Notes: a model not told the origin generated them from the letters alone. Counted from the stretch's first letter, positions 3,454 to 36,584 are shown. The stretch is 64,000 nt of DNA from Phaeosaccion multiseriatum (GCA_965112735.1 OZ218955.1:3224001-3288000), one strand, 5' to 3'. Program-made: numbers and translations.

Positions 3454-5297
3454 GATTCCTGTTGAGCTGCCCAAGGGTCCTCATCAGCAGCGGCAGCATA
3501 ATCAGTTGGTGATACAGATTGCCTCGGCGGTGCTGGAGATCCTAGAGAATCCAGCCACGACAAGTCTTCTGCTGCGTTGGTAGAAGTTGTTGTAGTAGTG
3601 GTAGTAGAAGTAGTAGTAGTAGCAGAGGTAGTAGGAGGAGAAGTAGCAGTAGGAGTAGTGGTAGTGGTGGTAGTCTCAGCAGTAGCAACCCCCCCCCAAG
3701 CACCACTACCACTGGAGTCATCAGCCGGAGTATCGCTGCTGCTGCTGCTGCTGCTGCTGCTGTCATCGCTGTCTTTGCCTGTTCCTGAGCTCGGCCACGG
3801 GAATTTCCACCGTCCTTGTTCCTCCTCCTCTTCCACCTCCTCCATGAGCAACTCCAAGGGCATTTCCTCCCTCTTCAGCACTCTCCGACGCCCCAAACCA
3901 TCACCATCATTAACATCGCCGTCGACGTCGCCGCCATCTGCCGTTATCGTATCACCATACTCCGCAAAACTGGCACCATCCGCATCCGCATACGCCCCAG
4001 CAGCACCACCACCAGCCTCAGCACCAGCCTCAGCACCAGCCTCAGCACCAGCGTCAGAGTCCCCTCCCAGGAGTCGCTGTTGTAAGTCGTCCTTGGCCCC
4101 TGTGAGCAGCTTCCCCCAGTCCTCATCCGCGTCGGGTAGAGACAGTCCTAGGGGTCGGAGCGCACGGTTCGTGCGTCCTCCCGGCTTCTCGTAACGAATC
4201 TGATGTGTGTTGTTGGCATGCAGAGGAGCGAAGGAGAGGCGGAAGAGCGAGGTGAGGAGGAGGAGGAGAAGGACGAGAACATGTAGAGAAGTAATAAAGA
4301 AGCAGTAAAGAAGAAGAGAAAGAAGGAAACATTTCGCCTCCCCCCCATCCCTTCCCCTCTCACCCCTTCTTCTCCTCCCCCTGACCTGCTCCCGCCTCCC
4401 CTCCTCCCCTGCCCCCCCTCCCTCCATCCCTTCTCCCTCCCGCCCTCCCTCCCCCTCCCCCTCCTTCCTTCCTTCCCTCACCTCGCTCTCCACTTCGAAT
4501 ACCAAGTCGTCTGTGGTTGTGAGGGCCTTCAGAGGTGCCCCCAACAGCTTCTCCGGAAGGGACTTGTCCTTGCTGCGGCGCTGGCGACGACGAGAAGAGG
4601 CCAATCTGAATACGTAACACGCGAAGCAAAAGGAATGTGCGGGTCGTGCGGAGGGAGGGGGGAACGGATGGATGTAGTGAGTGAGTGAGTGAGTGAGTGA
4701 GTGAGTGAGTGAGTGAGTGTGTGAGGAAGTCAGAGCAAGAAGAAGCAAGAAGTAAGTAGAGAAAAACCGACAGAGTAAGTAGAGAAGAATAGGACCGAAA
4801 GACTCTACCAACACAGCACCAGGTAGGTCGCAAGTGCACTACGTAATCTTTCGTACCCCGTACCTTTGATCCTCATCATCGAACCCTTGCAGCGAGCCGA
4901 TGAGCTTGGCCTTGCCTCCCTTGTTTCCCATCCCCATATCCATCGTAGTCAGGTCCACAGGGTTAAGAACGCCCGTTTGCAAGAGGGAGAGCGTCATGTT
5001 GAGGCTGTTCATTGTGGTGTTGGCCTGCTTCTCCCTCTCCTCCTGTGTCTTGGGGGTGGCACTGGGCAGCAGGAGAGCGGCGGGGGCGGCGGCCTTGGTG
5101 GCGGCGTAGAGAATTCGCCCCGACTCGTAAGCCGCGCTGTGGGTGGGTGGGTGGGTGGGTGGGTAGGTGCGACACGAATCGATGGCGTTGAATATTAATC
5201 TCCTGGGTGACAGAGGCGCCTTTCTCTTACATGACATTCAAATTGTGTTTTGGGGTACAGTATACCGACATTCATCCATCACACACACGCACACACA

Positions 5298-5334
<37 letters not shown>

Positions 5335-9127: not shown

Positions 9128-9169
<42 letters not shown>

Positions 9170-11483
9170 GTGTGTGCGTGTGTGTGTGTGTGCGTGTGAG
9201 TGTGTGTGTTCTGTCTCGTGTGTGTGTGTGTGTGTGTGCGTGCGTGTGTGTGCGTGTGTGTGTGCGTGTGAGTGTGAGTGTGTGTTCTGTCTCGTGTGTG
9301 TGTGTGTGTGCGTGTGCGTGTGTGTGTGTGCGTGTGTGTGTATGTGCGTATGTGTGTGTGTGCGTGTGTGTGCCACGCTGACCCGTGTCACGAGAGGGCT
9401 TGTAGGTGTAGTGGAGTGGAGCAAAGTGATGCAACAAGTGCAAACATCACCATCACCATCATCACCATCATCACACCCCCATACCCCCCTGCCCTCCCTG
9501 CCCCTGGCCCCTGCCTCCTGCAATGCCCCTCCCGTATCACCAACAGGTGGGCTACATCGAGCACGGCGTCATCGTACACGGCTGTGGAGGGCTCGACGAG
9601 ATCTCTCCACTGGGGCCCTCCAAGGTGGGTGATGGTCACGGTGATGGTCACGGTGATGGTTGAACTGCCAAATCCTTGGCCCGTTGGCTGGCTATCTCAA
9701 TTGAAGTTTCAGTTTACTGGACCTACCCCAAGTCGATCAGAACGAAGTTATCAATCTGAAGGCCCATGTCCATGCGGAAACAGCATCATGGCTGGTCCTT
9801 CATGTATTATATTATATTGTCTGGAAACAACATGGAACTGAAATTGAAACTGCATCTGCAACACTGAAACTGCAACTGCTCAGGTGATCGAGATCAAGAA
9901 CACTGCCGAGCCTGGAGCCCCCAAGGAGTACGAAACCACGGTAAGTGAGGAGTGAGGAGTGAGGAGTAAGGAGTCTATCGATATCGAGATGGCCCGATAA
10001 ATGCATCTATTTCTATGCCACCCTCATCTCCATGGCCCGTATGCCTCTATTTCTGTGCCACCCTCATCTCCCCGCCTCCTTCCCAAACCTCTGCTCCCCT
10101 ACCCTGTCCGCCTCTCCACTGCCATCCCCTGCCAATGTACTCTACCCTGCCCGATATACCTCTACCCTTGTGATCAAATGGCGACTGTCTGCCTCTCGAT
10201 GTACACCAGGAGTACGAGGTGGATCCTGAGCAGTACGGCATTCCCCTGTGCACTATTGAGGACCTCAAGGGAGGGGACAGAGACACTAACGCACGTCTGC
10301 TCAGAGAGGTGAGCAAGGACTTGAGTAGAAGCATATAGGGGAGCGGGAGGGGGGGGGTATTAGAGGCGTATGGGAGGGAGGGGAGCGAGGGGAGGGAGCG
10401 TATGAGTGGCAGACCTCTCTGCCTCTCTGTAACTGTAGCGTAGCATGTTGGTTCTTCGTGGTGTCGTCGTGTGCGAAGAAAAGTTCCCTCTCCTGCTGTG
10501 CTCCCACCTCATCAGTCTGCTGAATGAAATGGGTACACTCCTCGCTGACAGTCCCACCCATCTCCTCCTCCTCCTCCTCCTCCTCCTCCTCCTCCTCCTC
10601 CTCCTCCTCCTCCTCCTCCTCCTCCTCCTCCTCCTCCTCCCCCCTCCCCCCCTTAACCCAACCCCAGACTCTAATGGGAGGTGACGAATCCAACGGCAAG
10701 CGCGACGCCGTTGTGCTCAACGCAGGGATGGGTCTCTACGTGTACGGCCTCTGTGACACCATCGAGGCAGGCTTTAAACTGGCCAGAGAGACGCTGAACA
10801 AGGGGCTCGCCATCAACCAATTGGACCTTTGGATCGCTGCCTCAAAGGAGATCGACGCGGTGAATGTGGATTACAAAGAGGCCACTGCGACGAAGCTCAA
10901 GGTGGAGGCACAGAACGATCGAGCGGAGAAGATTCGACAAATTCTCGCGTCCATGCCCCCTCCCCCTCACCCTACGGACCAACAGATGGCATTCTCGCTT
11001 GGTGGGGAGACCCGACCAGGGATGGACGTGGACGATGAAGATGACGATGACGACGACGGACCGAACTTTAGTGAGATGAGGGCCAACGTCCCTGCGCCTC
11101 CATACTACATTAACGATCGGATGCAGTACGTGCGTGTATACGAGGATGGCACCGAGGAGGTGGAGGAGGACGATGAGGCCCAGGCGATTGCGGCGGCAGG
11201 AGGCGAGGGGGAGGGGTACGACGAGGAGGAGGATGATGAGGAAGGCGGTGGGAGGGTGAAGGCTGCCATGCGTGTCACCAATTCAAACCGCAAATTCTTC
11301 ATCAATGAGGAGCTTGAGTATCAGGCGTTTGCAGACCCGGAGGACAGGGCAAACGCTCAGCAGCTGCCTGGAGATGCTGCAGCAGCGGCAGGAGGAGGAG
11401 GAGGAGGAGGAGCGGCGGTGGCGGTAGCAGAAGCAACAGAGGAGTACCTCGACGATGACCTCTTCAAGCCCACAGACAGCTGA
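6506..11483 (+). CDS. trpD: Anthranilate phosphoribosyltransferase, plastid-targeted, with acidic C-terminal extension (10 exons: 6506-6994, 7497-7629, 8136-8206, 8436-8502, 8700-8819, 8990-9114, 9547-9624, 9884-9940, 10210-10308, 10668-11483)
   Basis: Spliced motifs [85 protein letters not shown]; signal peptide plus TEA-FLTP. Confidence 0.96.
9125..9372. repeat. (TG)n-rich compound microsatellite in a trpD intron
   Basis: Long TG/CG dinucleotide tract. Similar tracts lie at 5282-5332, 13581-13730, 23645-23742 and 31740-31800. Confidence 0.95.
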
Positions 11484-13578: not shown

Positions 13579-13676
<98 letters not shown>

Positions 13677-13681
13677 CGTGC

Positions 13682-13718
<37 letters not shown>

Positions 13719-15847
13719 CGTGTGTGTGTGCACAGGGCCACAGGGAGGGTGTCAAGCTTAGGTTACTGGCCCTACCCAACCAACACCACTTAATTCTTAA
13801 AGACGATCGGTAGCGGTGAGGTTGGATGCGATGACCAGGCGAGGGAAGCACACCATAACTTCTGATAACTTCATTGACTTACCGACCCCTAGAATGTCGA
13901 GCCCGGCGTGATGTGCCACTGCCATGTAGATCACAGCAAGGCTGATGGGAATGCCCTTCTTGGTCTCGAGCACCTGTCGTCGTACGTACGTAAGTAGTAC
14001 GCCATATAACAAGATCAGCAGTGAGAAGCCAGTGCAAGTGAGAGTGAGTGAAAAAAAGAAAAGAAAGCCACCTACCTACATACGCACGACCATACGCACG
14101 TACGTACGCACGTACATACGTACCTTGTCTATGAAGGAGTTGTTGGGGTTCTTATAGTCCCAAGCGTTGCCCTCTAACATACCGGGGAAGCCGAAAAGTA
14201 CCTTGCTGAGAAGCATCACACGCTCGAAGGTCGGCAAGGGGCCCTCGATGCCTGCCAGAGAAGCGTAGGTCGGGGGTGAACGGAGGAAGAGGGGTATGGG
14301 TAGGGAAGGGGTAACGTACCGGTGAGCGGGGACACAGAGAAGGGGCAAGTGGAAGAGAAAAAGGTGGTGGTGGTGGTGGTGGAGAAGGAGGGGTGGTGGT
14401 GGGGGGGAGGGGGAGGAGGAGGAGGGGAGGACGGGGGGCGGGATGGGGGAGGAGGACGGTGGTTGTGGTGGTAGAGGAGGGAGGAGGAGGAGAAGAAGAA
14501 GAAGAAGGAGAAGAAGAACAAGAAGGAGGAGGAGAAGAAGAAGAAGAAGATGAGGAAGAAGAAGAAGAATAACAGGGAGAAGAAGGAGGAGGAGGACAAA
14601 GACTACCCAAGCATACTCTGTATCTCTGTCATTCTCAAGACAGATCCCCCTCCCATATCCTCTGAGAAGGCGCAGACTCTCTCGCCCCCCCCCATCTTTC
14701 CCTCTCTGTCTTGCTCTCTCCCCTCTCCACCTCGATTCCCCCTACGCCTTATCCGTGTCTCCTTTCCACTCACCTCGCTCGGCGCTGTACGCGTCCCACT
14801 CCTCTGTCACGGCGAGACCCAAATCCTCAACCTGGCGCCGGATCTTCGCCTCTACGCACTCCTCCACCGACGATGTCTGAGATACCTGGCCACCCCTCCT
14901 TCTCCGCCTGCTGCTTCTGCTGCTGCTATCGCTGCTACTATCGCTGCTGCTCACGCTGCCCTCCTTCTTCTCCTTACTCAAACCAACGGCGCTGCTCGTG
15001 CCCCTCCTGCGGCGAATGGAGGCGGGATTGGCAATCTGAGCGATGAGCACCGCGCCGTCTAGTGCTTGGGCAGACTTTTCCCGCTGCTCGCGGTCTTCAT
15101 GCCAGTCTGGAAACGAATATTTCAAGTATTCAGATGGCCGCGTGGGAAGGGGTGAAAAAAGTACGTCAAGAAAGGGTTGTGTCTGTTACAGGATAAAGAG
15201 AGAGAGGGTGGGGTATACACAAGGTCTCACATTCTTTCATCCCTCTCTCCCCTCCCCCCCCCCCTCCCTCTCTTTCCTTTACCACAGCGGTAAGCACCAC
15301 GATCACCAGGCATTGGCGTACCTTTGACAAGCGTCGCCGCATGCGCGATCCTGTTTACCGTGGGCATCATGGCAAAAGCCAAGTCCAGCTGGTCGTCCAC
15401 GCTCCAATCGCCCCCTGCCCCCCTTGCCCTCCCCCCCTGCGTGCCCTCATCTTCTCCTGCGTTGGTGCCGTTGAGCTCGCTGATCTGCCCTCGAAACACG
15501 CGGCGACACAGCTCCACAGGCTGATGAGTTAGCCAGATCAAAGCCTGCAGCGAGCAACAGAAGCGGGGAAATATGTGGCATACAAAGGACAGAGGAGGGT
15601 AAGGTAAGCCTTAGGGTGCGAGTGAAGTAATGCCCATCGCGCGGGCGCAGGGCTGTACTGTGTATTTGAGAGAAAAGTTGAGTCATACCTTAAAACGGAC
15701 GTGGGTCTGGGTGGGCAATGCTTGGGCCACTCTTTGCGCAATGTGCGTGGTGAGTCTCCTACCGAAGGGCGAGCCTGTGGAAGCCTCTTCCGCACTCTGG
15801 GCAGCGCGGTAGTACACGCGGTAAAGGGCCCTCACTAAGGAAGGCAT
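11817..15847 (-). CDS. SirB1 / transglutaminase-like (Transglut_core2) family protein with long low-complexity insertions
   Basis: Exons 15847-15689, 15544-15322, 15106-14774, 14251-14124, 13973-13883 and 13579 onward give [14 protein letters not shown]...[36 protein letters not shown]...[10 protein letters not shown]...[12 protein letters not shown]...[10 protein letters not shown], the SirB1 signature. Start codon and last intron are uncertain. Confidence 0.85.
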
Positions 15848-17653: not shown

Positions 17654-18065
17654 ATCCCTAACCACTTTAAAACTCCCCTCTAAAACCCTCTCCAGAGGGT
17701 TTTATTTTTCCCGACGGCGGTATGAGCGCATTTCCTGTCACCACCACGGGAGATTCATATGAGAGATAGAGCTAAGACTCCTCTATCTCTCACTGTAAGC
17801 CCCGCCCTTGGTTGCCGCGGAGGCGTCAGAAACGAGGCGACAAAAAAATGGGTTTTGGCAGATTTTCGACACTGCGTATCATACGCTAGTGATAGCGTTA
17901 CCAATGGGGCTGACAGTCAGAGATAGAGGAGACTCTTATCTACCTCCCTCTGCCATCTTACGTGCCATCGACGTAAAATGCGCTCCTACTCCCGTCGGGT
18001 AAAACCCTCTGGTCGACTCTGGAGAGGGTTTTTTAGAGGGGGTTTTTTAAAAAGTGGTTCGGGAT
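17654..18065. mobile_element. Foldback / MITE-like element with long imperfect terminal inverted repeats
   Basis: ATCCCTAACCACTTTAAAACTCCCCTCTAAAACCCTCTCCAGAG...CCCGACGGCGGTATGAGCGCATTT pairs with 17976-18065. The inner arm 17773-17803 pairs with 17906-17938. No ORF; no clear target-site duplication. Confidence 0.75.
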
Positions 18066-18114
18066 ATTTTTTTTTTCATTATTTTTTTAGAACACTGGTG
18101 CAAGCAACACAAAA

Positions 18115-21100
18115 ATGGAGCCTCTGCGTCGCGCATCACTGACGCTGCTGTCAGTGTTGGCGTTGAGACAGATCGTTACAGTTCAAGCCCAACAAGAAGT
18201 TCAAGGTAAGCAGGCAGGCAGGCAGCCAGGCGCGCCTTGCAGCTGTTGAGCTTTTGAAGAACGCAACAACTCAGTCCCACAGAACAATGCAGCTGGCTGT
18301 AGCCGGAGGGATAGCATACTCCTCCATTTGCTGCCAGTACTGTTTATAGATATATAGATATTATATATATATAAAAATAGGTGTTGATACTCGAGCTGGT
18401 TAAGATTTTCTACTCTTGTTCGCTTGCGACCACGAACGGCTTTAACCTCGCACATGCTGAGTCAACCCTAACCCCTTTTTTCTGCTCTCGTGCTCTGCCG
18501 TGGCTCTCTCTCTTTCTTGGTGTTATCCTTCCATCCTCCTCTCCTTTCTACGGTTCTGGCTGCCACTGGTGGGCGTAATATCTCCAACAATGCATGGCTT
18601 GTTGTCACGGGCCGCCAGACTTTGCTGGACTCTGTGGTCTGGCAGGAGGAAGAACCGGAACAGACGACACGTGCTCCGACTGCACCTCCGCCGTCGCTTG
18701 CTTCGGCGTAGATTATCCTAACGTTGCACCGTGTAAGGTGCGTCCGAGCACATCCTTCTTCTTGGAGGGACTGCTGTCTTCCCCTTTTCCCCTTCCTTCT
18801 CATCGTTAGCTACTAGCTGCTGGTCTTGATGTTCCTGGTCGGTGCTTCTTCAGGGCAGTGAAGAGCGGCGGCTTGCTTGGCTGTGCGTGAGAAGAGGGAG
18901 GTACAAGGGGCAGTGCGTGGCATGACTACCTGCGTGGTTCCTCTGTGTGCTCTCCTCGCTCTGCCCCATTTGTTGCTGCTGCTCTCATTGCCCTTGCACG
19001 GGCTCCTCCGGCCGGCTCCACTCTGTACCACTCTCCCCCCCTTCCTACCGCTGCTGTTCCTTAACTTCCATGCATGGCGCATTTATCTCTCTCTTGTTGT
19101 CTGGTGGGGCCCTCGCTCGTCCCCCTTCTCCCCCACACTCGTACTGTTGGGACTGGCTGGGCAACCTCCGTGTCCCCCTTCCTTCGTCGGTGGCTGGCGC
19201 TGCGAACTTGAACAACGCCTCGCGTCCTCGTGACTCTCCCAGTCGAAGACATTTAACGTAAGCATCAGCCAAACCCCTCACGATACCTTGCCTGTCACTC
19301 TCGCTCTGGTACTGGCTGCGCTTGTGAAATATCGCTTGGCCTGCCTGTGGTCTACCTGTCGCTAGCCTGTCAGTAGGCTGTAAGTAGCACTGCTCAGTGC
19401 CTTGCTTTGGCAAACACAGAACTCCTCTAACGTGTTCACTCCATCATGACCATCCCTGTGGTGCTGCTGCTTTTCGCTCGTCTTGAAGAACTGCCAAGTG
19501 GTGTGCACTCGCTTCGGCGCGTGCGAGGTGAGTCGGTGACGTGAGGCGCTTTCCCGCTCTCGTCCCGCCCATCCAAAGAGCACTACTACTACTACTGGCC
19601 TGTTCTTGGATCTGGGGGGCGGCGGGTGGGGTGACGAGTAATGGATCAGCCCTTAACTCCCCCGAGATGTTGGTGCTGCTCGACTCGTGTGTGGGCCGTC
19701 CCGTTCCCTCGTTCGTCTTCATTGTTGTCTGCTCCAGGCTTCCTTGCTAGTTCTCTTTGTGCCTTGTACTCATCCCCCTCCCCTCCGTATGCGTCGCACC
19801 ACGCCATTGTGCTCTTCGCCTGCACATCGCAGGAGGCATCCTTCAGCGGCGCCTCAAGTGTGACGTGCGCTGGAAGGGCTTCGTGCTTTGTAAGTGTCGA
19901 TCTCTCTGGCTTGAGCGAAGTACCGAAAAATTACCAGCTGCTACTATGCGCAATGGCTATTAGTAGCTCGGTTTTCTATCATCCTGAGCTTAGCACATAT
20001 CTCCCCGGCTACAGGTTCATTACCGCCTGCTCTTGGATCTCAGTGGGATGGGAGACGAAGTCTGGAAAAGCGCTAACTCCCACTGAGATCCTCTCGTTGC
20101 TCGACCCTTGCGTGGGTCGTCCCGTTCCCTCGTTCTCCACGGTTTGCGCTTGCGTTCTTCACGCAAGGCTTCCTCAGCTCCCTCTGTGTGCTTTACCTCC
20201 CAATGTGAGCTGATTGGCCTTAGCTACTTGACCTCATCGCCCCTCCTCGCCCTCTGTATGCGTCGCAATACCCCGTTGTACTCTTTCCCTGCACATCACA
20301 GAAAGCGAACTTCTTCGACACCTCAAGTGCGGCATGTGATGGGCCCTATTCGTGTAATGTAAGTGTCGCTCTCTTAAGCAAAGTAGTGCCTACGCTTGCA
20401 TGTTCCCAGCACCGCCCCACCCTCTCGCTGGCTTCCTATTCCATCTTTCGCCGTGGCCCTCCCTCGTCGTGCCTTGACACCCTCGCCACACCCACCTGTG
20501 ACCTCTACAGGACGTTAAACTTGCAGGCACCTCCACAGCAACGTGCGAATACAATTCGGATTTGGACGAGCATTGCCCTGGCCTCCAGGTTCGTGCGGCA
20601 AGCAGGGGATGAGGGTTTGACGAGTCTTCTTTGGGACGCCCAAGTGGGGCAACGGGGTGCCGCCGTGACGTGTGACTGTCCTAATGGTTGCGGTGTTATG
20701 ATACCTGCGCTTAGCTCCAGCAACTTCTACCCTCCCTCTCTGCATTGGCTGGTGAATCCAATTTTCAGGCTTTGAGTGACACGGCGTGCTGCTCTGGAAA
20801 CGAGTGGTAAGTCGTCATGGGTCTCAAGCGGCGCTGCAGTATGTGGTCATTTGTTCCTAGGCACGCTCACTTCCATCATTCTCACGCTGCACGGTACTCA
20901 GCGCTTGTTTGTCTGCCTTCCCGCCCACTGAGCCTGCTGCACTTTAATACCCTTTTTTTCTCCCCCCCCCCTCCCCTCCCTCTTCGACTCGACCTACTCG
21001 ACACGAGCGAAGCCCATGGGGAACTGAATGCGGTGAGGACGATCCAGCGTGGTCCCGAGTCGTTGGTTCGAAGGTTGGATACACCAGACTGCTTTCTATT

Positions 21101-23642
21101 TGCCAGGCCCATTTCTGTTCTGGAAAGTTCACAGAAGCGCGTCTTACTCTCCGCCCCCCGCTTTTTGACCTTCTTACTGTGGTGCTGCCCCCCCCTCTGT
21201 CGCTTTTGGTCGTCGTTGTCATGCTCCACAGAAGCTGACGGGAGTGTCGATGCTCCGGGATGCACGGGTGGCTTTGACCGCACCTCGAGGACGTGCACGT
21301 GCGCTTCGAATACAGACCCCGCCGTAGTAGCTTGTAGTACCCGCAATCGTTGCTTGGTACGTTAGGAGCATCGTTGCATTACCGTCCATTTGGCTCTTCT
21401 TGCTCGTGGGCTGTCGGGCCATGGCTGTGTCCAGCTGCGCCGCCCCCCGTTTGCCTTCTCCAGCGCGAGCGTGGCTATTGACTATGCCGGCTTCTTCGAA
21501 GAAACAGTAGTCGAGATGCTCCCCGTGACTCACTCTGTCCTCACCCCCCCCCCCACCCCCCCCCACGTTACTGCCTGTGCCCGTTGCATCTTTTGCAACC
21601 TCGATGCCGTGCCCGTTGTCTCTCGTGTGGACTGATTCCTCGCTCTACGCTCATGTGGCTGTTTCAGGAAACCACCTTTAAGGTAGTAGAGCTTTGTCCT
21701 GAAAGGGGAAGGGGTTTTACGAAAGAGCCCTTCGCTTTCGTGCTTGATGAACAGTGTAATTTGTTGCCTTTCGCTCGGGTGTGCTCTTGTGCGGAGTGAG
21801 GTGGTTGGATTAGTCGGTGCCATCGCTCTGCTTTGTCTACTAGGCTCAGTACGTGTCCTTTGCTTCAAGACTCATCGACCTCACGCCAGAGCTATTGCTT
21901 GCTGCTTCTTGCTTGGTCGTCTTGCAGGACTGCGAGGTGGATTGCAGCGGCAGTACTGCGTGTTTGGTGAGTCATTGACGTGGAGCCTGTTTCATGGCAT
22001 ATAGCTATGCTCTGCCTGTCCTTTTAAAGTCTCCGAATATTTAGCCGAGAGTCTCCCGTGTGGTGGTCCTCCCGTTCTTCCTCCCTTCTCACTAGTACTT
22101 ACAGCCTGGATGGATAAAGCTTCCTCCGTTCTCGTCCCTTTATGCTCCATCTTCCGGTGTGTAAAAAAGTAGCCTAGCCGAACTCTCATCCCGCCCGCCC
22201 CTCCATTTCCTCCCCCCAACCTGTGCTCTTCCCCTGTCCATCGCAGCGCGCATCTTTCCTCGGCACCTCAAGTGTCTCTTGTGAGGGCAGGAAGGCGTGT
22301 TTGGTAAGTGTCCCGTACTTTTCTTGGTATCTGTACATTGTGTGCCTGCACCAAGCGCGGCACCTCCTCCGTGCCATCCTTTTTTGGCCGCCCGAGACTT
22401 GTCACTGGAGGTGCCCTGCCTCCCCTTCTCCCGGCCGGAGGTATTAGTTTTGTGGCTTAGCTACTTGCTTCCCTCAGCCATGCGAAGACCACGATCAGCC
22501 GAGCTGCACCGCGTCCCAGCACGCGTGTGGTTCCTTGCTCCCATGCACAGACTCGTTTTGGCTGGCTGTTGTCTACGCAAGGAGCAAGCAAACGCGCATC
22601 TGGTGCGCTGTCTTGGACATGCTGCACTCCTGCTGGTCGGGCCTCCGAGCGACAGGGTCTTCCTCATGAATCCTCCCCGCCCCCCCCTCATTGCCTGCTT
22701 GGCTGCCTGCCTGCATGCTTTGCTTACCTCCCTCTCCTCATCTGTCTCCGTACAATGCACGGCGACTTTGTCTCGACTTTTTTGTTGTTGTTGCCGCCAC
22801 CAGTACGCCACAGCTTGCCTCTTGCAGAGAGAGGGGGTGGTGGAGGAGGAGGACTGTACGGCGGAGCTGACGTCGTGCCGCGGAGGATTCTTTGAAGGTG
22901 CTTGCCGGGTAAGTCGTTGCTCCAGAACAAGGGTGGGGGGGTGGGGCGTAGGCAAGTCAACAGATGAAGCTCAATCGCCGCCGCTCAGCCAGCGCAACTT
23001 GTCGCAACCTTTGTGCACATTTTGATCCTCACGCGCAAAGCAGCATCGGCTGCGGATGCTGGCTGAGATGAGCTGTCTTTGCGTGCCAAGATGTGGCTGC
23101 TGGCTGACATGGAAAGAAAGAGGGGATGCGGGGGGCGATCGAAGGCACGACGGGAGGGACACTAGAATGAGGAGTCTAACTGGTGTATTTCCCACCCCCG
23201 CGACCCTCCCTCCTCTTGCCTTTTCTGGCCTCGCTGCACCCATCCGTGACCTCTGCAGGGCGTTGAGCTGTACGGGAACTCCCGGGCCACGTGTAGTACG
23301 GAATACTCCTGCACCTACGGGTTACCCGACCACCTTATGGTTCGTGCGCGAGGAGGGGGTGAAAGAGTAAAAAGTCCAGTAACGGGTGTCATTTGACTTA
23401 GACTGAGTGCTTTTTGTTGCGGGAAGGTGATGCCTGCATCGAGCTCCTCTCCTCACTGTTGTACGTTGTCGAATTGCGTATTCTCAGGTCAAGACAACGA
23501 TAGGAACAGCGTGTTGCACTGGAGTCGGGTGGTAAGTCATCAAGCCCGAAGCAAAGCTCGATGCAGTGTGCGCGTGTAGCCCCTCCCCAATGCCCGGCAT
23601 GGTCGTCCCTTGCTGGTCTTTCCCTCCCCTGCTGCGCTCGCC

Positions 23643-23728
<86 letters not shown>

Positions 23729-26310
23729 TGTGTGTGTGTGTGTTTCTTGCCAGTGCACGCTGCACCGTACTCTCTCTCTCGCCCCTTCAAGCAAGGAAGC
23801 TCACTTTCATTCTCTCTGTCTGGTTTGTTTCGCTCCACAACCCCCCTCCCCCCCCCCCGTGGAGGGCGTTACCTTATGCGGTGAGGACGATCCATTCATG
23901 GTCCTGTAGAGAATGTGCTGAGTAGAGCAAGGGGGCCTTGGAGCAACCCATGGAAGAGTCTCGCTTCCATGGGCCCGTCTTTTTGCTAGTCCCCTCCTTG
24001 TCTGCTGTTCCCGCTTTATTATCTGCTGCTTTTCATCGCACTGTGTGCACCTCGCTCGGATTCTTTTACTGGAAGTGCTCTGTGTAGCTAGTCTTGACCC
24101 ACTTTTCTCTCGTCTTTTGCTGCTGGGTGGCTCCCCGTCTCCTCCTGCCACGGCGTCTCGCACTGGCTGGCAGACGTCGACGAGGACGAGATTGCAGACC
24201 ATCTCGACAAGTGAGTGTTCTAAACTATGGACCGACTGGAGTGGTGTGGTGTGCGTTCTGATTGCGTGCGTGTAGCTAGCTACCCCCCCCGCGTCTCGCT
24301 CCCTTTGAAATCTCTCTCCTTGCTTGTTGCTCCTTGGTCCTCGCAGCTGCCCTGGCGTAGGCAACCCCAAGCAAGAGGATGCCGATGGAGACGGAGTTGG
24401 AGACGCTTGTGATAAGTAAGGAGCGAGTTTGAGTGAATGTGCCCCCCCCCAAGCGTCTCTCTGTCATGCCATCGTCATCCCCTGCTTGTCTACCCCCCCC
24501 GCGTCTCGCTCCCTTTGAAATCTCTCTCCTTGCTTGTTGCTCCTTGGTCCTCGCAGCTGCCGTGGCGTAGGCAACCCCAAGCAAGAGGATGCCGATGGAG
24601 ACGGAGTTGGAGACGCTTGTGACAAGTAAGGAGCGAGTTTGCGTGAATGTGCCCCCCCCCAAGCGTCTCTTTGTCATGCCATCGTCATCCCCTGCTTGTC
24701 AAGTTTTCCCGTGCGTGCGGGTTGCTTTGTGACTTGGCCGGCTCCCTCCTGTGTGTGGCCAAGTGCCCTGCCTGGTGTCTTCCTTCCGTGAAGGATCTCA
24801 CGCTGACTAGCTACACCTCCCTTCTCTCCTCTTTGCTTCCTCTGCTCCTTCCAGCTGCCCTTCTGTGGCCAACGCGAACCAGGCTGCTGTCACTACCTGT
24901 GGTGAGGACGATGTCCTTTGAAACATCACAGGACTGACTGTATTGCCCTGGCTGGTGATGTGTAATACTCTACTGGCTTAGATTGATATCTCTCTCAATC
25001 AATCATCTCCGCCTCTTTGGATGACGTGTGGTGGTGCTTTCTTTTCAGACGATGGCCAGGCCCAAGGAGACCCGATGGTTTTCGGCTTCAAGCAGCAAAT
25101 CTTCCTCTTCAAGGGAGCCCACAACACTTGGTACGCTGCCTTAGCGGAGAGGCACTTGCAGTGGAACTGGAGGCTGTCCGTCTTCGCCTCCTGCGAGAAC
25201 GGCGCCCAACCGGTGGGTGAAGAGATGCGGCATCATTGGGGGGACTCGTCGTCGAATCTGAGCACCTGGGCTCCCGAGACAGTCACTGATAGTACTGGCC
25301 GATCACCACAGTTCCTCACCCGCCCCTCTTTTCCCTCGGCGGCGGTCTCGCGCTTGACTTCTCGGTTTCTTCTCTCTCTTCCATTAGCCAGACTTGGCTT
25401 GCCCCCCTTTGACTCATGAACCCCTCGTCACCTTCCCTTTGCAAACACACAACCGCACGCACGCACACACGCACGCACACAGACATACATTACCGCCTTG
25501 GCCTTTACCTTCCCTCCCCCTCTGGACGGGGATGACAAGACCGCTCTCCTTGGAGGGGCGGGCACGGCTGCGTCTTCGAGAGTGCTGGTGGAGGTCATAG
25601 ACGTGGAAAAGTACAACCCGGACTACATCCGGGGGGAGGAGCGCACACCCCGTGCCGAGCAAATCCTGGGCTACGGCTCTCTGGGAGTCACCATCGAGGA
25701 CAAGAAAATCACCAAGCCGGGGCTCTACCACATGGCCAACGGTGGCACGGTGATGGCATTTAACGCGTTCGGCCCCTGTCAGGTCAAGCGCGACATCCAC
25801 ATGATGGAAGAGCTCAACGAGGCGGAGAGGCTCAAAGCCTCGCCTCTCAGACGACGCCGCCTCTCGGAGATGGCAGTGGATGACGACCTTGCGGCGCTGC
25901 TGGCTGTGGAGTCTCGCCTGCACAAGGCCGAGGATAGGCCCCTCTGTGAGGCGTGGATCGCGGAAAAGCGTGTCGAGAGAGACCTCTTCACCTCACCCGG
26001 GTCGTGGGCGAGCGTTTACATCTTCACCGACACGTACTCCTTCCAGGTGGACTACCGCCAGGAGACTGAGCGCTGCTACGCCCATGTGCTCGACGTTGGC
26101 TTCATCCACAAGCCCAATGACATCGGCGTGGAACGCTGGAGCGGGGTCATGGGAGAGACTCAGAGCCTGAAACGCGACAGCTCTGGGCATCCCCTCGACA
26201 GGGACAGGGACCTCATCCTGTCCTCCTCCAAGGACGAGGACTACGTCGTGGACGGGCCCTGGGGGACGGACTTTGTGGCCCGACTGGACGGCGCCTGGAC
26301 GGAGGAGTAG
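18115..26310 (+). CDS. Secreted micro-exon protein (~731 aa): signal peptide, two Cys-rich modules, thrombospondin type-3 repeats, GDP(M) VWD/root-cap-like C-terminal domain
   Basis: 23 exons: 18115-18205, 18619-18737, 19243-19257, 19489-19527, 19833-19889, 20302-20358, 20511-20588, 20769-20806, 21013-21032, 21232-21356, 21668-21682, 21928-21966, 22247-22303, 22828-22908, 23259-23339, 23488-23531, ~23855-23880, 24174-24210, 24347-24415, 24557-24625, 24855-24901, 25049-25212, 25483-26310. Total 2196 nt, all phases compatible, no internal stop. Exon 17 lacks a visible AG (poly-C tract) and the exon 14 acceptor is ambiguous. Confidence 0.8.
24281..24700 (+). repeat. Near-perfect 210-bp tandem duplication (intron plus a 69-nt TSP3 exon)
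   Basis: 24281-24490 and 24491-24700 differ at 4 positions by eye. Confidence 0.95.
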
Positions 26311-26968
26311 CTAGCTAGCTGGGAAGGGAGGGTAGAGTGGATGGTAGCGGACGGGCTTGGGTGCTGCTGCTGGGCCCGGAGCACGAGAGAGATCGACGCG
26401 CCTTGTGAAGGGCCTTGTGGAGGGGAGGTGGCGTGCGCATAGGAGCTGAGAGGGAAGCAAGGCTCGTGGGTTTTTTTTCGATTCGAAGAGGGTATTAGCT
26501 AGGCGTGGTGGCACTCTGTCTGCTGATGGAGCTGTGAAGAAGAGGGGCTCCGGGCCTTGCTTGGTGCCCCTTCTTGGGGGATGTTTCTTTAGTTTGGGGA
26601 GCTTACAATAGCGATGGGAAGAAGGGGGGGGGGTGTACTATTAGTTGAGTTTAGTTTAGGCAGGGCGGGGACCTTTGGTCTGGCTGGGCGGGGAGTGGTT
26701 TGACGAGCCGCTCTTCTCGGGCTCTCTGTAGTTGGAAGTTTAGCTTCGTTAGGTGGGGGGGGGGGCGGCGGGTGGGCAGAAGTTTTAGTTTAAGGGGGGC
26801 TGCTGGAGGCAGAGAGGGGGGGGAGAAACCCCCCCCCTTAAAGGCGTTGTTACTTTGGGAGCTTAGCGATAGGAAGGGGGGGCGTTTTGGTTTTCGTTCT
26901 TCATTCCCTTCTCTCCGATTCCAGTTATTAAGTCAATAAATAATTTCCTCCCACCCGATCTCTCTCGA

Positions 26969-28194: not shown

Positions 28195-28675
28195 ATGGCT
28201 TGTGCTAGAGCGGCGACTAGGTGCTTGCGACACAAAAGCCGCCCATGGCTGATCAGCAGCAGGAGCAGGCACACGAGCACAGTCGCCTCAAGTGTTCTTC
28301 CAGGTAGCACCAGTCGCAGAAGGAGCAGGATGAGGAGCAGTGGTTGTACCCTCGACCCTTTTCGCCATGGAGTTGGACGGCGGTATATCTTCAGCGGTAC
28401 CAAAGCTGCTGGAAGGAGTACTACTGACAGGCTCAGTGGGCGGCAATCATTGGGGGGGGGCTGGTCTGCCTTTGTGGCCGACTGCGGGGTTGCTCATGTC
28501 TCCGTGGCCGAGGGTGGTACACGGGTAAAGATAGAGTGGGAGGACGGCCACTCGAGTGAGTTTCTCGCGCTCTGGCTTCGAGATCACAGCCCCTCGGCCT
28601 ATGATGGTGCAACAAAGCAGCGCAAGGTGGACACCCACCTCATTCCGCTCGAGACGTCCGTCTCGTCGGCTTACT

Positions 28676-28715
<40 letters not shown>

Positions 28716-30536
28716 TAGGGGCGTGTCAGAAAGGAAAAGAGAGGATGGGAGCTGTAGGCTCACAACAGAAAGTGGTGGCAGCACACTCAATCTGACAGTG
28801 GAGTGGACGGACCTCCAAGGGTCTCCCTCTCCCTCTCCCTCCTCGTCGTCGTCGTTCCCCCTCTCGTGGCTCAAGTCACAGTGCTCCTCTGCGCGAGCCC
28901 GAAGCATGCGCGAGAGATTCCGCAGCTCTGTTCCGCCAGGGATACCTTCGGAGGCATTGGAAGCAGCAGCAGCAGCAGCAGCAGGAGGAGGAGGAGGAGG
29001 AGGAGAAGGAGGAGGAGGAGGAGCCGCTGAGGCGAGGGAGCTGCCACTGAGACAAGTACTGTGGGGCAGCGACCTTTTCTCGTCGTCATCGTCGTCGTCC
29101 CCGTGCTGCTTCGACTATCAGGAGGTCATGTCGGAGCATGCCGAGCAAGGCGAAGACGAAAGTGGCCCCGAAAATAGCAGTAGCGCTAGCAGCAGCAGTA
29201 GTAGCAATAGCAGCAGCAGCAGCAGCAGGAGCAATAACAGCGGGACAGAAGGAGGAGTGGATAGTGGTGGCCGTGATGGAGGAAGCAGCCTGGACGGGGT
29301 GCTCACAAGCCTCTTAACACACGGCATTGTCCTCGTGCGAGGTACGCCTCTCACCATGGATGCAACAGAAGCTTTCGCTCGTCGTGTAGGCGGGCATATT
29401 CAGCACACTCTCTACGGCGGTATGTGGAGCACAGCACCCCCGCAGGAGGAGTGGGAGGAGGAGCATCAGGACCTGGCGTATGGACAGGGAAGATTGGAGG
29501 CGCACACGGATTGCGCGTACTTTGCACAGCCGCCGGGGCTGCAGGTGAGGGAGGGAGGGATATTTTAGAGGAGTATGGGAAGAGAGAAGAGCGAGGGAGA
29601 CGTGCACCCCAGCCGCTGTCCAATAACAGGCAATCAATCGCCCGTGCGGCGGATTTCCTTTACTTTTTTTACCCAGCATGGTACACCCGGCTTTTTTGTT
29701 TGGCTCTTCTCTTGCTGCTGCTGGGCCCGCAGATCTTCAACTGCGTGACACAGGCCCACATGGGGGGAGAGAGCACCTACGTCGACGGCTTCCATGTGGC
29801 AGAGCGACTGAGACGGGAGCACCCCGAAGCTTTCCGGTTCTTCACCGACACGCCGCTGCGTTACTACTGCTACGACGGAGGCTACCACTACGAGGCTATG
29901 GGTCCTGTATTCACACTCGGGAAGGCCAGTCGTGAGAGAGATGGGGCAGCAGCAGCAGCAGGAGGAGGAGGAGGAGGAGGAGGAGGCGGGGAGGAGGAAG
30001 AGGAGGGTGAGGGGAAGGAGGAGGTCGAGGAGGTAGTGCAGGTGCGGCACAACGACAATGACCGCGCCCCTCTCAGCCACCTGACGAGCGGCCAGATCGA
30101 CGCTTTCTACGGGCATCATCAGACACTCTCTGCGGTCATTCGAGACCCTAACATGGTCGTGGTCAGGAACCTCCAGCCGGGGGAGATGGTGGTGGTGCTG
30201 AATCACAGGGTCATGCACGGGAGGCTGGCCTTCTCGGAGGAGGAGGAGGAGGAGGTTTATACCCGTGCCCCAGCAGCACCACCACCAGCAGCAGCAGCAG
30301 CAGCAGCAGGAGGAGGAGGAGGAGGAGGAGAGGGGCTACTGACAAGGGGCAGCAAGGGCACGAGTGAGTGTGAGAGCAAGAGGAAGGGCAGGAGGACGTT
30401 GCTGGGGTGCTACATAGGGATGGACGAGGTCATGTCTCGGGCAAGAGCGAGGGGCCTTATTGGGCCTGCAGCAGCGGCGGCGGCATTGCCTACGACAAGG
30501 GCGGCCAGGATGGGCTCGGGGGGACTGCCTTCGTGA
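28195..30536 (+). CDS. Trimethyllysine dioxygenase-like Fe(II)/2-oxoglutarate dioxygenase (exons 28195-29544, 29733-30536)
   Basis: GBBH-like N-domain (W.DGH.S.F..LWLRDH), then AHTDCAYFAQPPGLQ|IFNC, GGESTYVDGF, NHRVMHGR, RRTLLGCY. The Arg/Ser-rich N-terminus looks like a mitochondrial presequence. Confidence 0.85.
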
Positions 30537-33681: not shown

Positions 33682-34169
33682 GTAGCGGACCCACCCTCAC
33701 AATCAAGCCTCTAGTCTCTACTCAGGCTTCTGACCCTACCTCCACCACTACTCTTACTACTCCCTGCCGCTAGCCCTTCTCCCTCTCCTCTCCTCCGTGC
33801 CCCTGCTCGTTCTCGTTCGGTGAAGATGGAGGGTTTGCAGCAGCAGCCGCAGCAGCCGCAGCAGCAGTAGAGCAGCGACGGCCGCAGCAATAGGTACAGA
33901 TCAAAGAGAGGTCAAGACAAAGACGCGAAAGAAGAGCCAAGGAGGTGAGGCGGTGTAACAGATACCAAAACAAAGATTGTTAAAGGTGACTACCTGGTGT
34001 CAGGCCTCCCCTCCTCCTCCCATTTTTTCACAGATCCATCCTCAGTGTGGTCACGGGGAGAGGAAGGAGAGTCCAGGAGCAGAGGATAGACCTGAGGAAA
34101 GAGGAGAATCCCGGGAGGGACTTTGGTCTCAATCTCACGGCGCTGAGTTCCTTATTGGATCCGCCGCCG

Positions 34170-35177
34170 ATGGAGCGGGGGGGGGCGGGATTCAACAACA
34201 TGGGGGCGATGGAGCAAGTCCCACCGGGCAGCACGTGCGGCGCGGTCGGGTGTAGCCACTTGTCTACACCCTCGGGCTGTTGCTTTCAGCACGCTGATGA
34301 GTGGCGGATGCGGGCTGGCGGTGCCGTTGCGAGTGGTGACGCTGCCGGTCCGTCTGCCCCATCTGGGGGGGTCGGTGCTGCTGCTGCGGCTCCTCCCGCC
34401 CCTCCTGCTGCTGCGGTTGCACCTGGTGAAGCTGTTGTGCATGATCTCGCTCTCGCACCTGCCGTGGTTCCCGCCATCGCCACTTCTGAGGGAGTGATGG
34501 TTGCGGCTGGACCTCTCGTAGCTCCCGCGCCTGCTCCCGCCATGGCCCCTCCTACCTCTGCAGAGCTGTCGGCTGCTGCTGCGACGGCTACTGCTGCGGC
34601 TACGGTTGGTAGTGCCACTGCTACGGCGGCCACCGCTAACGCCCTCGTACCACCTGGGGGCATTGTGGCTCCGATGGTAGTAGGAATGGCGGCCACACAG
34701 AGCTCAACGACCAAGGGGCATCGAACGAAGCGGTGCAGTGTGCAGGACTGCCAGAACTTCCCCAAGAAGGGCGGGGTTTGTATCAAGCACGGTGCCAAGC
34801 GGAAGCGGTGCAGTGTCGAGGGCTGTGAGAACGGCATCATCCGAGGGGGCAAGTGCTGTAGGCACGGGGCGGCGAGGAAGCGGTGCAGTGTGGAAGGCTG
34901 CCAGAACAGCAAGGTTGCCAATGGGGTGTGCAAGAGGCACGGGGCAAAGTTCAGCAAGAAGAAGTGCCAGATAGAAGGGTGTGAGAAGGGAGCCATCAAG
35001 GATCAGGTCTGTATAAAGCACGGCGCCGTTCCTCCCAAGTGCACCGCGGACAACGGCACATGCACCAAGAACGCAGTGCAGGGGGGGAAGTGTATTAAGC
35101 ACGGGGCAGTTAGGAGGAAGAATGCTGCCGCTCGAGCTGCTGTGGGGTCAACAGTGGCGGCAGCGGCGGCGGCGGCC

Positions 35178-35223
<46 letters not shown>

Positions 35224-36333
35224 GAGGAGGAGGGGGAGGGGGAGGAGTACCCGTCGCAGGAGGAGGAGGGGGGGGAGGAGGAGCGGGAGGAGGAACGGGA
35301 GGGGGAGGAGGTGGGGGAGGAGGTGGTGCAGTAACAGCAGCGATGGGAGGAGCACCGATGGAAGCAGGAACGATGGCGAGAGGGGAGGAGAACGAGGAGG
35401 GGAAGAGGGAAACTAGGGCGGAGAGGGCGGAGGGGGAATGGGGAGGAGGAGGCGACGACAATAGCAACAGCAACAACAACAGTAACGACAACAATAACGG
35501 TGGAGACGGTGCAGAGGAGGGCAGCGAGGGCGGGGGAGAGCGAGGGACGAAGAGAGGAGGAGGCAGCGGCTCCGAAGGCGGTGGGCCTTTGAAGCGGCAA
35601 AAGAAGTTTGGGGGTGGTGGTGGTGGGGCCGGGGTTGCTCCTCGTTCACCCTTGAAGGAGTCCCCGAGGTGCAACATCAAAGGATGCCGCAGAGTGGCCA
35701 AGGAGGGCGGCGCCTGCTCTGCGCACGGCAGCAGCAGCTCTGCTCCGGGAGAGTGCCCGGAGCTGCAGGCAGCACCAGCCACGGCCGTCGCAGCCGCCGA
35801 AGCCGCTTCGGGCACGTCTCACGAGCTTGCCGCACGTGACGCAGTGCTCATTCTGGCGTCCGCCGCTCAGCGCCCCAATGGAGGTGCTTCGGCGGGCCTG
35901 CCGGGCATCAGCAGGCCGTCCTCGGGGCCCTTGTCAGTGCCCCCCTCCACTGCGGTTTCCGCTGCGGCAGCAGCTGCGTGCGCGGCAGTAGCGGCGGTAG
36001 CAGGCTCAGGAGGAGGAGGACCAGCACCGGCAACGCCAGAAGGAGCAGAGGCAGTGACAGGAGTGGTAGCCGCGGAAGGAGGAGGACGAGTAGAAGGAGC
36101 AGCAGTAGGAGGAGCAATAGCGGCAGGTGGAGAAGCAGCAGAAGCAGCGCCTGTGCCGGCAACGGTGGTAGCGCCCGCTGAAGCAGCGCCAGCTGCAGCG
36201 CCAGCTGCAGCAGCACCAGGAGCAACCCCAGTGGGTGATACAACAACAGGGACACCAGCACCGGTACCAGCCTTGCCCGCATATGAAGTGGCCTCACTGG
36301 CAGGAGCAGGAGTAGCACCAGAAGGTGATGCGG

Positions 36334-36365
<32 letters not shown>

Positions 36366-36584
36366 ACACCAGTTGGTGATACAGCAGCACTGGCACCGGC
36401 CCTACTGGAAGAGACTCAGACACCACTGCACAGTCAAGAGCTTCAGGCTCAGGCGTCACTGGGGAGTCAGGGGCTTCACACTGTTCCGTACCCTTCTCTG
36501 CCTGAGCCTGTGGCGACAGTTCCGGACCTTGCCCCGGTTGCCACGCCGCCCGCCGCAGCAGCCACAGCTAGCACGGCAGTTTGA
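34170..36584 (+). CDS. WRKY19-like (CxxxxC...CxxHG) zinc-finger repeat protein, single exon
   Basis: Five tandem KRCSVEGC..A..GG.C..HGA-type repeats (34725-35110) plus one isolated copy (PRCNIKGCRRVAKEGGACSAHG), in Ala/Gly-rich sequence. Confidence 0.8.

What the first reader, a model, noticed from the sequence alone, without database searches (positions are those of the whole stretch)
18115..26310. Hidden 23-exon micro-exon gene for a secreted, modular Cys-rich / thrombospondin-3 / VWD-like protein
Seen in sequence: a stretch that looks intergenic in the ORF track splices, with consistent phases, into MEPLRRASLTLLSVLALRQIVTVQA-QQEVQ|DFAGLCG...APCK|SKTFN|NCQVVCTRFGACE|EASFSGASSVTCAGRASCF|KANFFDTSSAACDGPYSCN|DVKLAGTSTATCEY...|ALSDTACCSGNE|CPWGTEC, a second such module, TSP3 repeats, and a GDPM domain. 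Exons are as short as 15 nt. Most repeat exons are phase 0-0 and a multiple of 3 (15, 39, 57, 57, 78, 81 nt), so any can be skipped or duplicated without a frameshift. Inference: a cell-surface or extracellular-matrix protein (adhesion or recognition) whose C-x-G-x-x-[SA]-C repeats each form one exon-encoded solenoid rung, possibly diversified by alternative splicing or exon shuffling. I do not recognise this architecture as described.
Basis: partly seen in the sequence, partly recalled or inferred. Interest (0 to 1): 0.88.

Follow-up and report, generated by a model that had tools for sequence, protein, structure and literature searches.

The report
Algal micro-exon gene, secreted Cys-repeat/TSP3/VWD protein
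This stretch holds a probably real but transcript-unverified gene of a stramenopile alga, built from 23 mostly tiny exons, for a secreted acidic protein with two cysteine-repeat modules, calcium-binding thrombospondin-type repeats and a von Willebrand D-type end domain; it is one more member of a gene family this scan has already met several times in this genome.

Summary
On the + strand, 23 GT-AG exons (18115-26310) join with consistent phases into one open frame of 725 aa (reader: 731). Eighteen exons are 81 nt or shorter, two only 15 nt. Thirteen exons are symmetric.

Tested parts of the interpretation:
- The TSP3 exon matches thrombospondin-2 (E 6e-23) and COMP.
- The last two exons form a domain with relatives in 79 protein clusters; those with a named source are diatoms. 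Its model matches only VWD domains (Z 9-12, next 4.4).
- The exon 22/23 joint is confirmed by homologues.
- There is an N-terminal signal-like segment and no other hydrophobic one.

Weak points:
- No RNA run exists; the four runs found are DNA.
- One joint is ambiguous. Exon 16 needs a weak GTCGGG donor, or else GTAAGT plus an 89-nt exon 17 (752 aa).
- The solenoid fold and splicing-based diversification are untested.
- dN/dS of the repeat exons is 0.4-0.7, so there is no sign of positive selection here.

DNA depth shows that 23.0-25.2 kb is shared at 95% identity or more with other genomic copies, while 19.2-23.0 kb is single copy. The scan found this family before on other DNA of this genome. 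The gene is new in architecture but ordinary in its parts.

The parts
18115..18205 (+). Exon 1 (91 nt, phase 0->1): start codon, signal-like peptide of about 25 residues, first residues of the mature protein
   Evidence: First ATG after an in-frame stop; the only hydrophobic segment of the protein; donor GTAAGC
18619..18737 (+). Exon 2 (119 nt): head of Cys module 1
   Evidence: AG/GT borders, phase 1->0; no Pfam hit
19243..19257 (+). Exon 3 (15 nt, phase 0-0): linker SKTFN, counterpart of exon 11
19489..19527 (+). Exon 4 (39 nt, 0-0): 13-residue three-Cys cap, counterpart of exon 12
19833..19889 (+). Exon 5 (57 nt, 0-0): one 19-residue C-x5-C repeat
   Evidence: the flanking intron is alignable with that of exon 6
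20302..20358 (+). Exon 6 (57 nt, 0-0): one 19-residue C-x5-C repeat
20511..20588 (+). Exon 7 (78 nt, 0-0): extended repeat, counterpart of exon 15
20769..20806 (+). Exon 8 (38 nt, 0->2): CC-containing closing unit of module 1
21013..21032 (+). Exon 9 (20 nt, 2->1): end of module 1
   Evidence: AAG acceptor
21232..21356 (+). Exon 10 (125 nt, 1->0): head of Cys module 2
   Evidence: no Pfam or Atlas hit
21668..21682 (+). Exon 11 (15 nt, 0-0): linker ETTFK
21928..21966 (+). Exon 12 (39 nt, 0-0): three-Cys cap of module 2
22247..22303 (+). Exon 13 (57 nt, 0-0): 19-residue C-x5-C repeat
22828..22908 (+). Exon 14 (81 nt, 0-0): acidic three-Cys unit
23259..23339 (+). Exon 15 (81 nt, 0-0): extended repeat; first exon inside the part shared with other genomic copies
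23488..23523 (+). Exon 16 (36 nt with weak donor GTCGGG; alternative end 23531 with donor GTAAGT, phase 2)
   Evidence: the DNA is confirmed by contigs covering 23419-23544 with no difference
23865..23880 (+). Exon 17 (16 nt, GAG acceptor; alternative start 23792, 89 nt, AAG acceptor)
   Evidence: contigs covering 23824-23944 show no difference
24174..24210 (+). Exon 18 (37 nt, 1->2): acidic short TSP3-like unit ending D-N
24347..24415 (+). Exon 19 (69 nt, 2-2): one TSP type-3 repeat
   Evidence: thrombospondin-2 E 6.4e-23, COMP 1.5e-19; Pfam TSP_3 18.4 bits, below the cut-off of 25
24557..24625 (+). Exon 20 (69 nt, 2-2): second TSP type-3 repeat, recent copy of exon 19
   Evidence: 67 of 69 nt identical to exon 19; unit 24280-24490 against 24490-24700 is 98.1% identical
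24855..24901 (+). Exon 21 (47 nt, 2->1): degenerate TSP3-like unit without the acidic loop
25049..25212 (+). Exon 22 (164 nt, 1->0): first strands of the VWD-fold domain, with G-D-P-M in place of GDPH
   Evidence: aligns with homologues; fold shown
25483..26310 (+). Exon 23 (828 nt with stop): the rest of the VWD-fold domain
   Evidence: 79 clusters with E down to 1e-28; AF2 model pLDDT 80, 16 of the top 17 fold hits are VWD domains at low Z
24280..24700 (+). Tandem duplication of a 210-nt unit of intron plus TSP3 exon
   Evidence: 98.1% over 211 nt; some DNA contigs skip 212 nt between 24476 and 24689 (weak, side length under 30)

Best explanation
This is one nuclear gene of an ochrophyte (stramenopile) alga, transcribed left to right from about 18.1 to 26.3 kb. 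It encodes a secreted, soluble, acidic protein of about 75 kDa (pI 4.5) rich in disulfides. The protein has a signal peptide and two paralogous 18-Cys modules. Each module is assembled from eight small exons: a head, a 5-residue linker, a 13-residue cap, 19-27-residue C-x5-C repeats, and a CC closing unit. Then come three to four thrombospondin type-3 calcium-binding repeats, one per exon, and a C-terminal VWD-fold domain of a subfamily whose named members are diatoms, with G-D-P-[LIVM] at the place of GDPH. The micro-exon layout is the trace of how the gene grew. Units of one symmetric exon plus its intron were duplicated in tandem. Only symmetric units survive duplication, so each repeat sits in its own exon. 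By inference, the protein is an extracellular matrix or cell-surface component. The TSP3 repeats bind calcium. The VWD domain mediates assembly, or perhaps Asp-Pro self-cleavage and attachment. The Cys-repeat modules form the exposed binding surface. Shown here: the exon chain, the TSP3 identity, the VWD fold, the tandem unit duplication, and the multi-copy 3' part. Inferred: secretion, calcium binding, the fold of the Cys repeats, and the function.
For: The exon chain is GT-AG throughout with consistent phases and one open frame. Modules 1 and 2 have matching exon plans and 18 Cys each; the protein has 46 Cys in total. The donors match those of a homology-supported neighbouring gene (GTGCGT, GTACGT). 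Pyrimidine-rich introns start and stop with the gene. TSP3: thrombospondin-2 E 6e-23, COMP 1.5e-19. VWD: 79 homologous clusters, and the domain alignment runs straight across the exon 22/23 joint. The AF2 model has pLDDT 88, and the top 19 PDB hits are all VWD domains at Z 9-12 with the next hit at 4.4. The Atlas search gave TM 0.60-0.67 to Root_cap and 'Imm upregulated 3' clusters. One homologue is named a VWFD domain protein. Asp-Pro is conserved in 40 of 41 family members. Only the N-terminus is hydrophobic. Tandem unit duplication at 98.1%. The best taxon hit for a neighbouring gene is Tribonema minus at 44%.
Against: There is no RNA evidence at all. The exon 16/17 joint needs either a weak GTCGGG donor with a GAG acceptor, or a pyrimidine-rich 89-nt exon that gives an odd Cys count. 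The N-terminal modules have no relative in Pfam, PDB, the Atlas or the 100 proteins fetched, so their fold and role are inferred. Pfam does not recognise the VWD domain, and the TSP_3 hits are below its cut-off. The VWD model is of a diatom homologue 32-37% identical to this protein; the window's own exon 23 alone gave only Z 3.2-5.4.
Confidence: 0.7

Rival explanations
1. A decaying or non-functional family member. The strong GTAAGT donor of exon 16 is the one used, the frame breaks, and translation stops in exon 19. Only a truncated Cys-module protein, or nothing after nonsense-mediated decay, is made.
For: GTAAGT lies 8 nt after the weak GTCGGG donor. Joined to the 16-nt exon 17 it gives a stop in exon 19 (my reading of the sequence). 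The GAG acceptor of exon 17 is unique among the 22 acceptors. The DNA is not misassembled there. Other, nearly identical copies exist that could carry the function.
Against: Two in-frame paths exist. All the other 20 junctions and the 828-nt last exon are intact. The VWD domain keeps 43 of 65 near-invariant family residues and an even Cys count.
Confidence: 0.13
2. A combinatorial system like the schistosome micro-exon genes. The symmetric exons are skipped or chosen in different combinations, so one gene gives many surface variants used for recognition.
For: Thirteen symmetric exons can be dropped without a frameshift. The protein is secreted. It belongs to a multi-copy family with a shared 3' part and a unique 5' part. 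Earlier notes of this scan report faster-changing repeat exons in other members.
Against: There is no RNA. Symmetry is also the simple by-product of tandem exon duplication. The repeat exons here have dN/dS of 0.4-0.7, and exon divergence (40%) is not significantly above intron divergence (35%). Dropping one repeat removes a Cys pair of a probably folded module. Only 39% of the CDS is in exons of 81 nt or less.
Confidence: 0.12
3. Two separate genes: a 5' Cys-rich gene and a 3' TSP3-VWD gene.
For: DNA depth changes near 23.0 kb. The weak joint lies at exons 16-17.
Against: The multi-copy part starts inside Cys module 2 (exons 15-17), not at a gene border. The 3' part has no start codon with a signal peptide in the model. 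Phases chain through. The strand bias of the introns is continuous.
Confidence: 0.05

Closest known systems
Schistosoma micro-exon genes (MEGs; PMC10526429)
   Same: Both encode secreted proteins from many very short, symmetric exons (3-81 bp in MEGs) separated by ordinary introns.
   Different: MEG proteins are small and largely disordered, almost all of their coding sequence is micro-exonic, and alternative splicing has been shown. Here only 39% of the CDS is in exons of 81 nt or less. The exons encode Cys-paired repeats and known folded domains. No splicing data exist. The host is an alga.
Thrombospondin/COMP type-3 calcium-binding repeats
   Same: The motif C-P-x3-N-x2-Q-x-D-x-D-x-D-G-x-G-D-x-C-D-N is matched repeat by repeat.
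   Different: There are only two full and two degenerate repeats. There are no EGF repeats, no coiled coil and no TSP C-terminal lectin-like domain. Each repeat is its own phase 2-2 exon.
VWD domains (mucins, VWF, FCGBP, RGM) and their plant and algal look-alikes (Root_cap PF06830; brown-alga 'Imm upregulated 3')
   Same: The fold is the same (Z 9-12; TM 0.60-0.67). A conserved Asp-Pro sits on the first strand, where GDPH is self-cleaved in FCGBP, MUC2 and RGM (PMC8267560).
   Different: Pfam VWD and Root_cap give no hit. His is replaced by L, I, V, M or T in all 41 family members. There are no C8 or TIL modules. The domain carries a helical insert. This copy has four Cys, against six in its family. 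Cleavage was not tested.
Disulfide-braced beta-solenoid repeat proteins such as beetle antifreeze protein (from my own knowledge; analogy only)
   Same: Short regular repeats, each with a fixed Cys pair.
   Different: There is no sequence or profile match. The period is 19 residues, not 12. The fold was not predicted here.

Membership tests
TSP type-3 repeat (PF02412) | Sequence match to the repeat profile or to known repeats | tested here: met
   A single exon matches thrombospondin-2 at E 6.4e-23 over 7-8 repeats, COMP at 1.5e-19 and TSP-1 at 2e-8. Pfam gives 17.7-18.4 bits per exon, below the whole-protein cut-off of 25. The joined repeats could not be submitted.
TSP type-3 repeat (PF02412) | Acidic calcium-binding loop D-x-D-x-D-G-x-x-D-x-x-D flanked by Cys | tested here: met
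   Present in exons 19 and 20. It is partial in exon 18 and absent in exon 21. Calcium binding itself was not tested.
VWD domain (PF00094 / PROSITE VWFD) | Sequence match to the Pfam model | tested here: not met
   There was no Pfam family for exon 22, exon 23 or ten homologues. One homologue carries the UniRef name 'VWFD domain-containing protein'.
VWD domain (PF00094 / PROSITE VWFD) | VWD beta-sandwich fold | tested here: met
   The model of homologue P0002:286-595 has pLDDT 88. The top 19 of 48,161 chains are all VWD domains, Z 9.0-12.0 with 124-153 residues aligned, and the next hit is Z 4.4. The window's own exon 23 alone gives the same ranking but only Z 3.2-5.4.
VWD domain (PF00094 / PROSITE VWFD) | GDPH self-cleavage motif (present in a subset of VWD domains) | tested here: not met
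   This protein has G-D-P-M. The family has GDP followed by L, I, V, M or T, with no His in 41 sequences, and Asp-Pro is kept in 40 of 41. Cleavage is not testable with these tools.
Schistosome-type micro-exon gene | Most of the coding sequence lies in symmetric micro-exons between ordinary end exons | tested here: not met
   Eighteen of 23 exons are 81 nt or less, but they hold only 851 of 2178 nt, or 39%. Thirteen exons are symmetric.
Schistosome-type micro-exon gene | Protein variation by alternative splicing of micro-exons | not testable with these tools
   No RNA run holds the locus, and the four runs found are DNA contigs without splice joints.
Brown-alga 'Imm upregulated 3' / plant Root_cap (PF06830) | Sequence or fold relation | tested here: inconclusive
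   Only a fold resemblance was found: TM 0.60-0.67 to Atlas clusters with these automatic names. There was no Pfam Root_cap hit. None of the 20 clusters looked up carries a brown-alga name.

The most novel reading that the evidence does not exclude
The gene is one member of an algal family built as a variable 5' array of one-repeat micro-exons joined to a near-constant 3' part. That part covers the end of a Cys module, the TSP3 repeats and the VWD domain, and is kept 95% or more identical between copies. The repeat surface would be diversified by unit duplication, exchange between copies or exon choice. That would make a cell-surface recognition system, for example for gametes, self/non-self or symbionts, built by a route not known in algae.
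Probability: 0.12. Interest if true: 0.8.

Novelty: new variant of a known kind. Interest (0 to 1): 0.5.

Why it matters
Gene finders miss genes whose exons are 15-80 nt long, so whole families of secreted proteins can be absent from algal annotations. This locus is a clean example: two of its four parts are validated by homology (TSP3 repeats and the VWD domain). It shows animal-style matrix modules (TSP3 and VWD) combined with an unclassified two-cysteine repeat in a stramenopile. It also shows repeat proteins growing one exon-plus-intron unit at a time. The family-wide Asp-Pro without His offers a natural test of what the GDPH motif needs for self-cleavage. If the family proves to be variable at the RNA or DNA level, it would be a candidate recognition system in algae.

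Tried and rejected
- **RNA evidence.** The one run search found four runs of one sample. Laid on 19201-25200 they are DNA contigs that cover the introns and show no splice joints.
- **Pfam.** Searches on exons 2, 7, 10, 14, 15, 22 and 23 gave nothing except sub-threshold TSP_3.
- **ESM Atlas by features.** Exon 10 and exon 23 gave no usable hit.
- **Profile of the 19-residue repeat against PDB.** Only chance hits, E above 2.
- **Domain profile against PDB by sequence.** Nothing.
- **Foldseek against PDB.** No E at or below 0.001, although VWD entries had the highest probabilities.
- **Hidden extra repeat exons, or a second family member in the window.** None found on either strand.
- **Positive selection on repeat exons.** dN/dS is 0.4-0.7. 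Exon against intron identity is 59.6% against 64.7%, not significant.
- **Assembly error at exons 16-17.** Rejected, because the contigs agree with the window.
- **A loose end at 22720 that reads like inverted exon 1.** I take it for a low-complexity overlap (GCAGGCAGGCAG), not a rearrangement.
- **Left out.** The spliced protein has no reference, so the whole protein and the N-terminal modules were not sent to Pfam, structure prediction or protein searches.


Full report
**1. The observation**

I read 17900-26500 and translated the three + frames. I then fixed exon borders at AG and GT sites.

- Twenty-three exons from 18115 to 26310 join into a 2178-nt frame of 725 aa with no stop. Every intron is GT...AG, and introns are 136-524 nt long.
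- Eleven exons are phase 0-0 and two TSP3 exons are phase 2-2. All are multiples of three.
- Eighteen exons are 81 nt or shorter. Together they hold 39% of the CDS.

**2. Is it more than a chain that can always be found?**

Several independent lines say yes.

- The two Cys modules have the same exon plan and 18 Cys each. The protein has 46 Cys in total.
- Forty homologous proteins align without a break across the exon 22/23 joint.
- The phase-2 joins AA|C give C-D-N-C-P, the canonical join between thrombospondin type-3 repeats. The unspliced frame gives K and a stop.
- Donors such as GTGCGT and GTACGT recur in a neighbouring dioxygenase gene whose introns are placed by homology to a Tribonema protein.
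- Twenty of 22 introns are pyrimidine-rich on the + strand (0.52-0.67), and T exceeds A in 21. Both flanks are at 0.45-0.46. The strand bias therefore begins and ends with the gene.
- A scan of both strands for AG-to-GT open segments with the C-x5-C motif found the model's exons, overlapping variants of them, and motif matches without the repeat consensus. No further repeat exon turned up.

**3. The weak joint**

- Exon 16 is followed by a perfect GTAAGT at 23532. That donor leaves phase 2, and with the 16-nt exon 17 it runs into a stop in exon 19.
- The frame is kept in only two ways. One uses the weak donor GTCGGG at 23524. The other uses GTAAGT with a longer exon 17 starting at 23792: 89 nt, an AAG acceptor, a good pyrimidine tract, 752 aa and an odd Cys count.
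- Short-read contigs agree with the window at 23419-23544 and 23824-23944, so this is not an assembly error.
- I keep the 725-aa model as the first choice, because the 89-nt version translates intron-like, C-rich sequence. Only cDNA can decide.

**4. RNA**

The single run search returned four runs of one sample. Laid on 19201-25200 they are DNA: contigs run through introns and there are no splice joints.

They still give two useful facts.

- 19201-23182 is single copy (depth about 55-100) and identical to the window.
- From about 23.0 kb to at least 25.2 kb the summed depth is three to eight times higher. Variant contigs of 95-99% identity lie there, and two different sequences lead into exon 22 at 25063-25064.

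So other genomic copies share the end of module 2, the TSP3 repeats and the start of the VWD domain, while the 5' part is unique.

**5. What the parts are**

*TSP3 repeats.* The 23 residues of exon 19 match thrombospondin-2 (E 6.4e-23, seven to eight repeats), COMP (1.5e-19) and TSP-1. Pfam TSP_3 gives 18 bits per exon, below its cut-off.

*C-terminal domain.*
- Exon 23 finds 79 clusters in 1.84 billion representatives, none above 39% identity. Of the 20 looked up, those carrying a source name are diatom transcriptomes.
- One homologue is named a VWFD domain protein. Pfam sees nothing in the domain.
- An AF2 model of a diatom homologue, built with 42 aligned sequences including both window exons, has pLDDT 88.
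- Aligned against 48,161 solved chains, its top 19 matches are all VWD domains: MUC5B, VWF, FCGBP, MUC2, Cypridina luciferase, RGMB and vitellogenin. Z is 9.0-12.0 and the next hit is 4.4.
- The ESM Atlas search adds Root_cap, ITI heavy-chain C-terminus, RGM_C and a cluster named 'Imm upregulated 3' at TM 0.40-0.67.
- The window's exon 23 alone (pLDDT 80) ranks the same VWD entries first, but only at Z 3.2-5.4. This is expected for a domain lacking its first strands.
- The window protein keeps 43 of 65 near-invariant family residues. It has lost one local Cys pair.
- At the place of GDPH the family has G-D-P followed by L, I, V, M or T. None of 41 has His, and Asp-Pro is kept in 40 of 41. In FCGBP the cleavage depends on the Asp of this motif (PMC8267560). 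Whether this family cleaves is open.

*N-terminal modules.*
- They have no relative in Pfam, PDB, the Atlas or the 100 proteins fetched.
- The repeat consensus is x-A-x-F-x-G-T-S-S-A-T-C-x-G-x-x-S-C-x.
- Their fold could not be predicted, because the spliced sequence has no reference.

*Protein as a whole.* The only hydrophobic stretch is at the N-terminus. The mature protein is acidic (pI 4.5, 75 kDa) and has no N-glycosylation sequon.

**6. How the gene grew**

- The unit 24280-24490 is repeated at 24490-24700 with 98.1% identity. This is one intron plus one TSP3 exon. Some contigs skip 212 nt there, a weak hint of copy-number variation.
- The units of exons 5 and 6 are still alignable through their introns. 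Blocks reach about 78% identity, with overall intron identity 64.7% against exon identity 59.6%.
- Modules 1 and 2 are no longer alignable as DNA.
- dN/dS between repeat exons is 0.4-0.7. This gene alone therefore shows relaxed or moderate constraint, not positive selection.

**7. Context**

- A neighbouring dioxygenase gene is closest to Tribonema minus (44%) and then to an oomycete. This places the genome among stramenopiles, with no close relative in the databases.
- Earlier notes of this scan describe several genes of the same kind on other pieces of this genome, and a note on the TSP3 units of this window.
- I confirm the VWD reading and the unit-wise TSP3 growth. I do not see the reported excess of exon over intron change in this member.

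**8. Literature**

- Micro-exon genes for secreted proteins are known from schistosomes (PMC10526429).
- A search for microexon together with stramenopile found nothing relevant.
- No paper combined TSP type-3 repeats with algal matrix proteins.
- 'Imm upregulated 3' is an expanded brown-alga family linked to development, with weak similarity to a moss gene, BIP2 (PMC4421812, PMC6909449).

**9. Verdict**

This is a probably real, unannotated gene for a secreted modular protein. The solenoid idea and the splicing-diversification idea remain untested. The architecture is new and the parts are known. It is another member of a family this scan has already noted in this genome.

Noticed in passing
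window 23645-23743, also 9126-9372, 13581-13731, 5280-5333, 45163-45269: Long (GT)n/(AC)n microsatellites. One lies inside intron 16 of the gene, and read contigs break there.
   Followed up: no
window 49307-47079 (-) and about 28474-30236 (+): Two paralogous gamma-butyrobetaine/TauD-type dioxygenase genes with introns. The minus-strand copy is 44% identical to a Tribonema minus protein.
   Followed up: partly
window 34047-36584 (+): An 845-aa open frame with three WRKY19-type zinc fingers (PF24906, E 1e-19).
   Followed up: no
window 1224-4814 (-) and 56807-61309 (+): Two very long open frames (1196 and 1500 aa) with no Pfam family.
   Followed up: no
window 24476-24689: DNA contigs of two runs join 24476 to 24689, removing about one 210-nt TSP3 unit. 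Depth is about 0.4 of single copy. This may be a copy-number variant or another genomic copy; the support is weak (side length 22-25 letters).
   Followed up: partly
window 23000-25200: Summed contig depth is three to eight times the single-copy level, with variants at 95-99% identity. Other genomic copies share this 3' part of the gene, and two different sequences lead into position 25064.
   Followed up: partly
proteins P0001-P0079 (alignment A1): The whole VWD subfamily, whose named members are diatoms, has G-D-P followed by L, I, V, M or T and never GDPH. The domain is attached to varied N-termini, such as subtilase S8 and CBM_4_9.
   Followed up: partly
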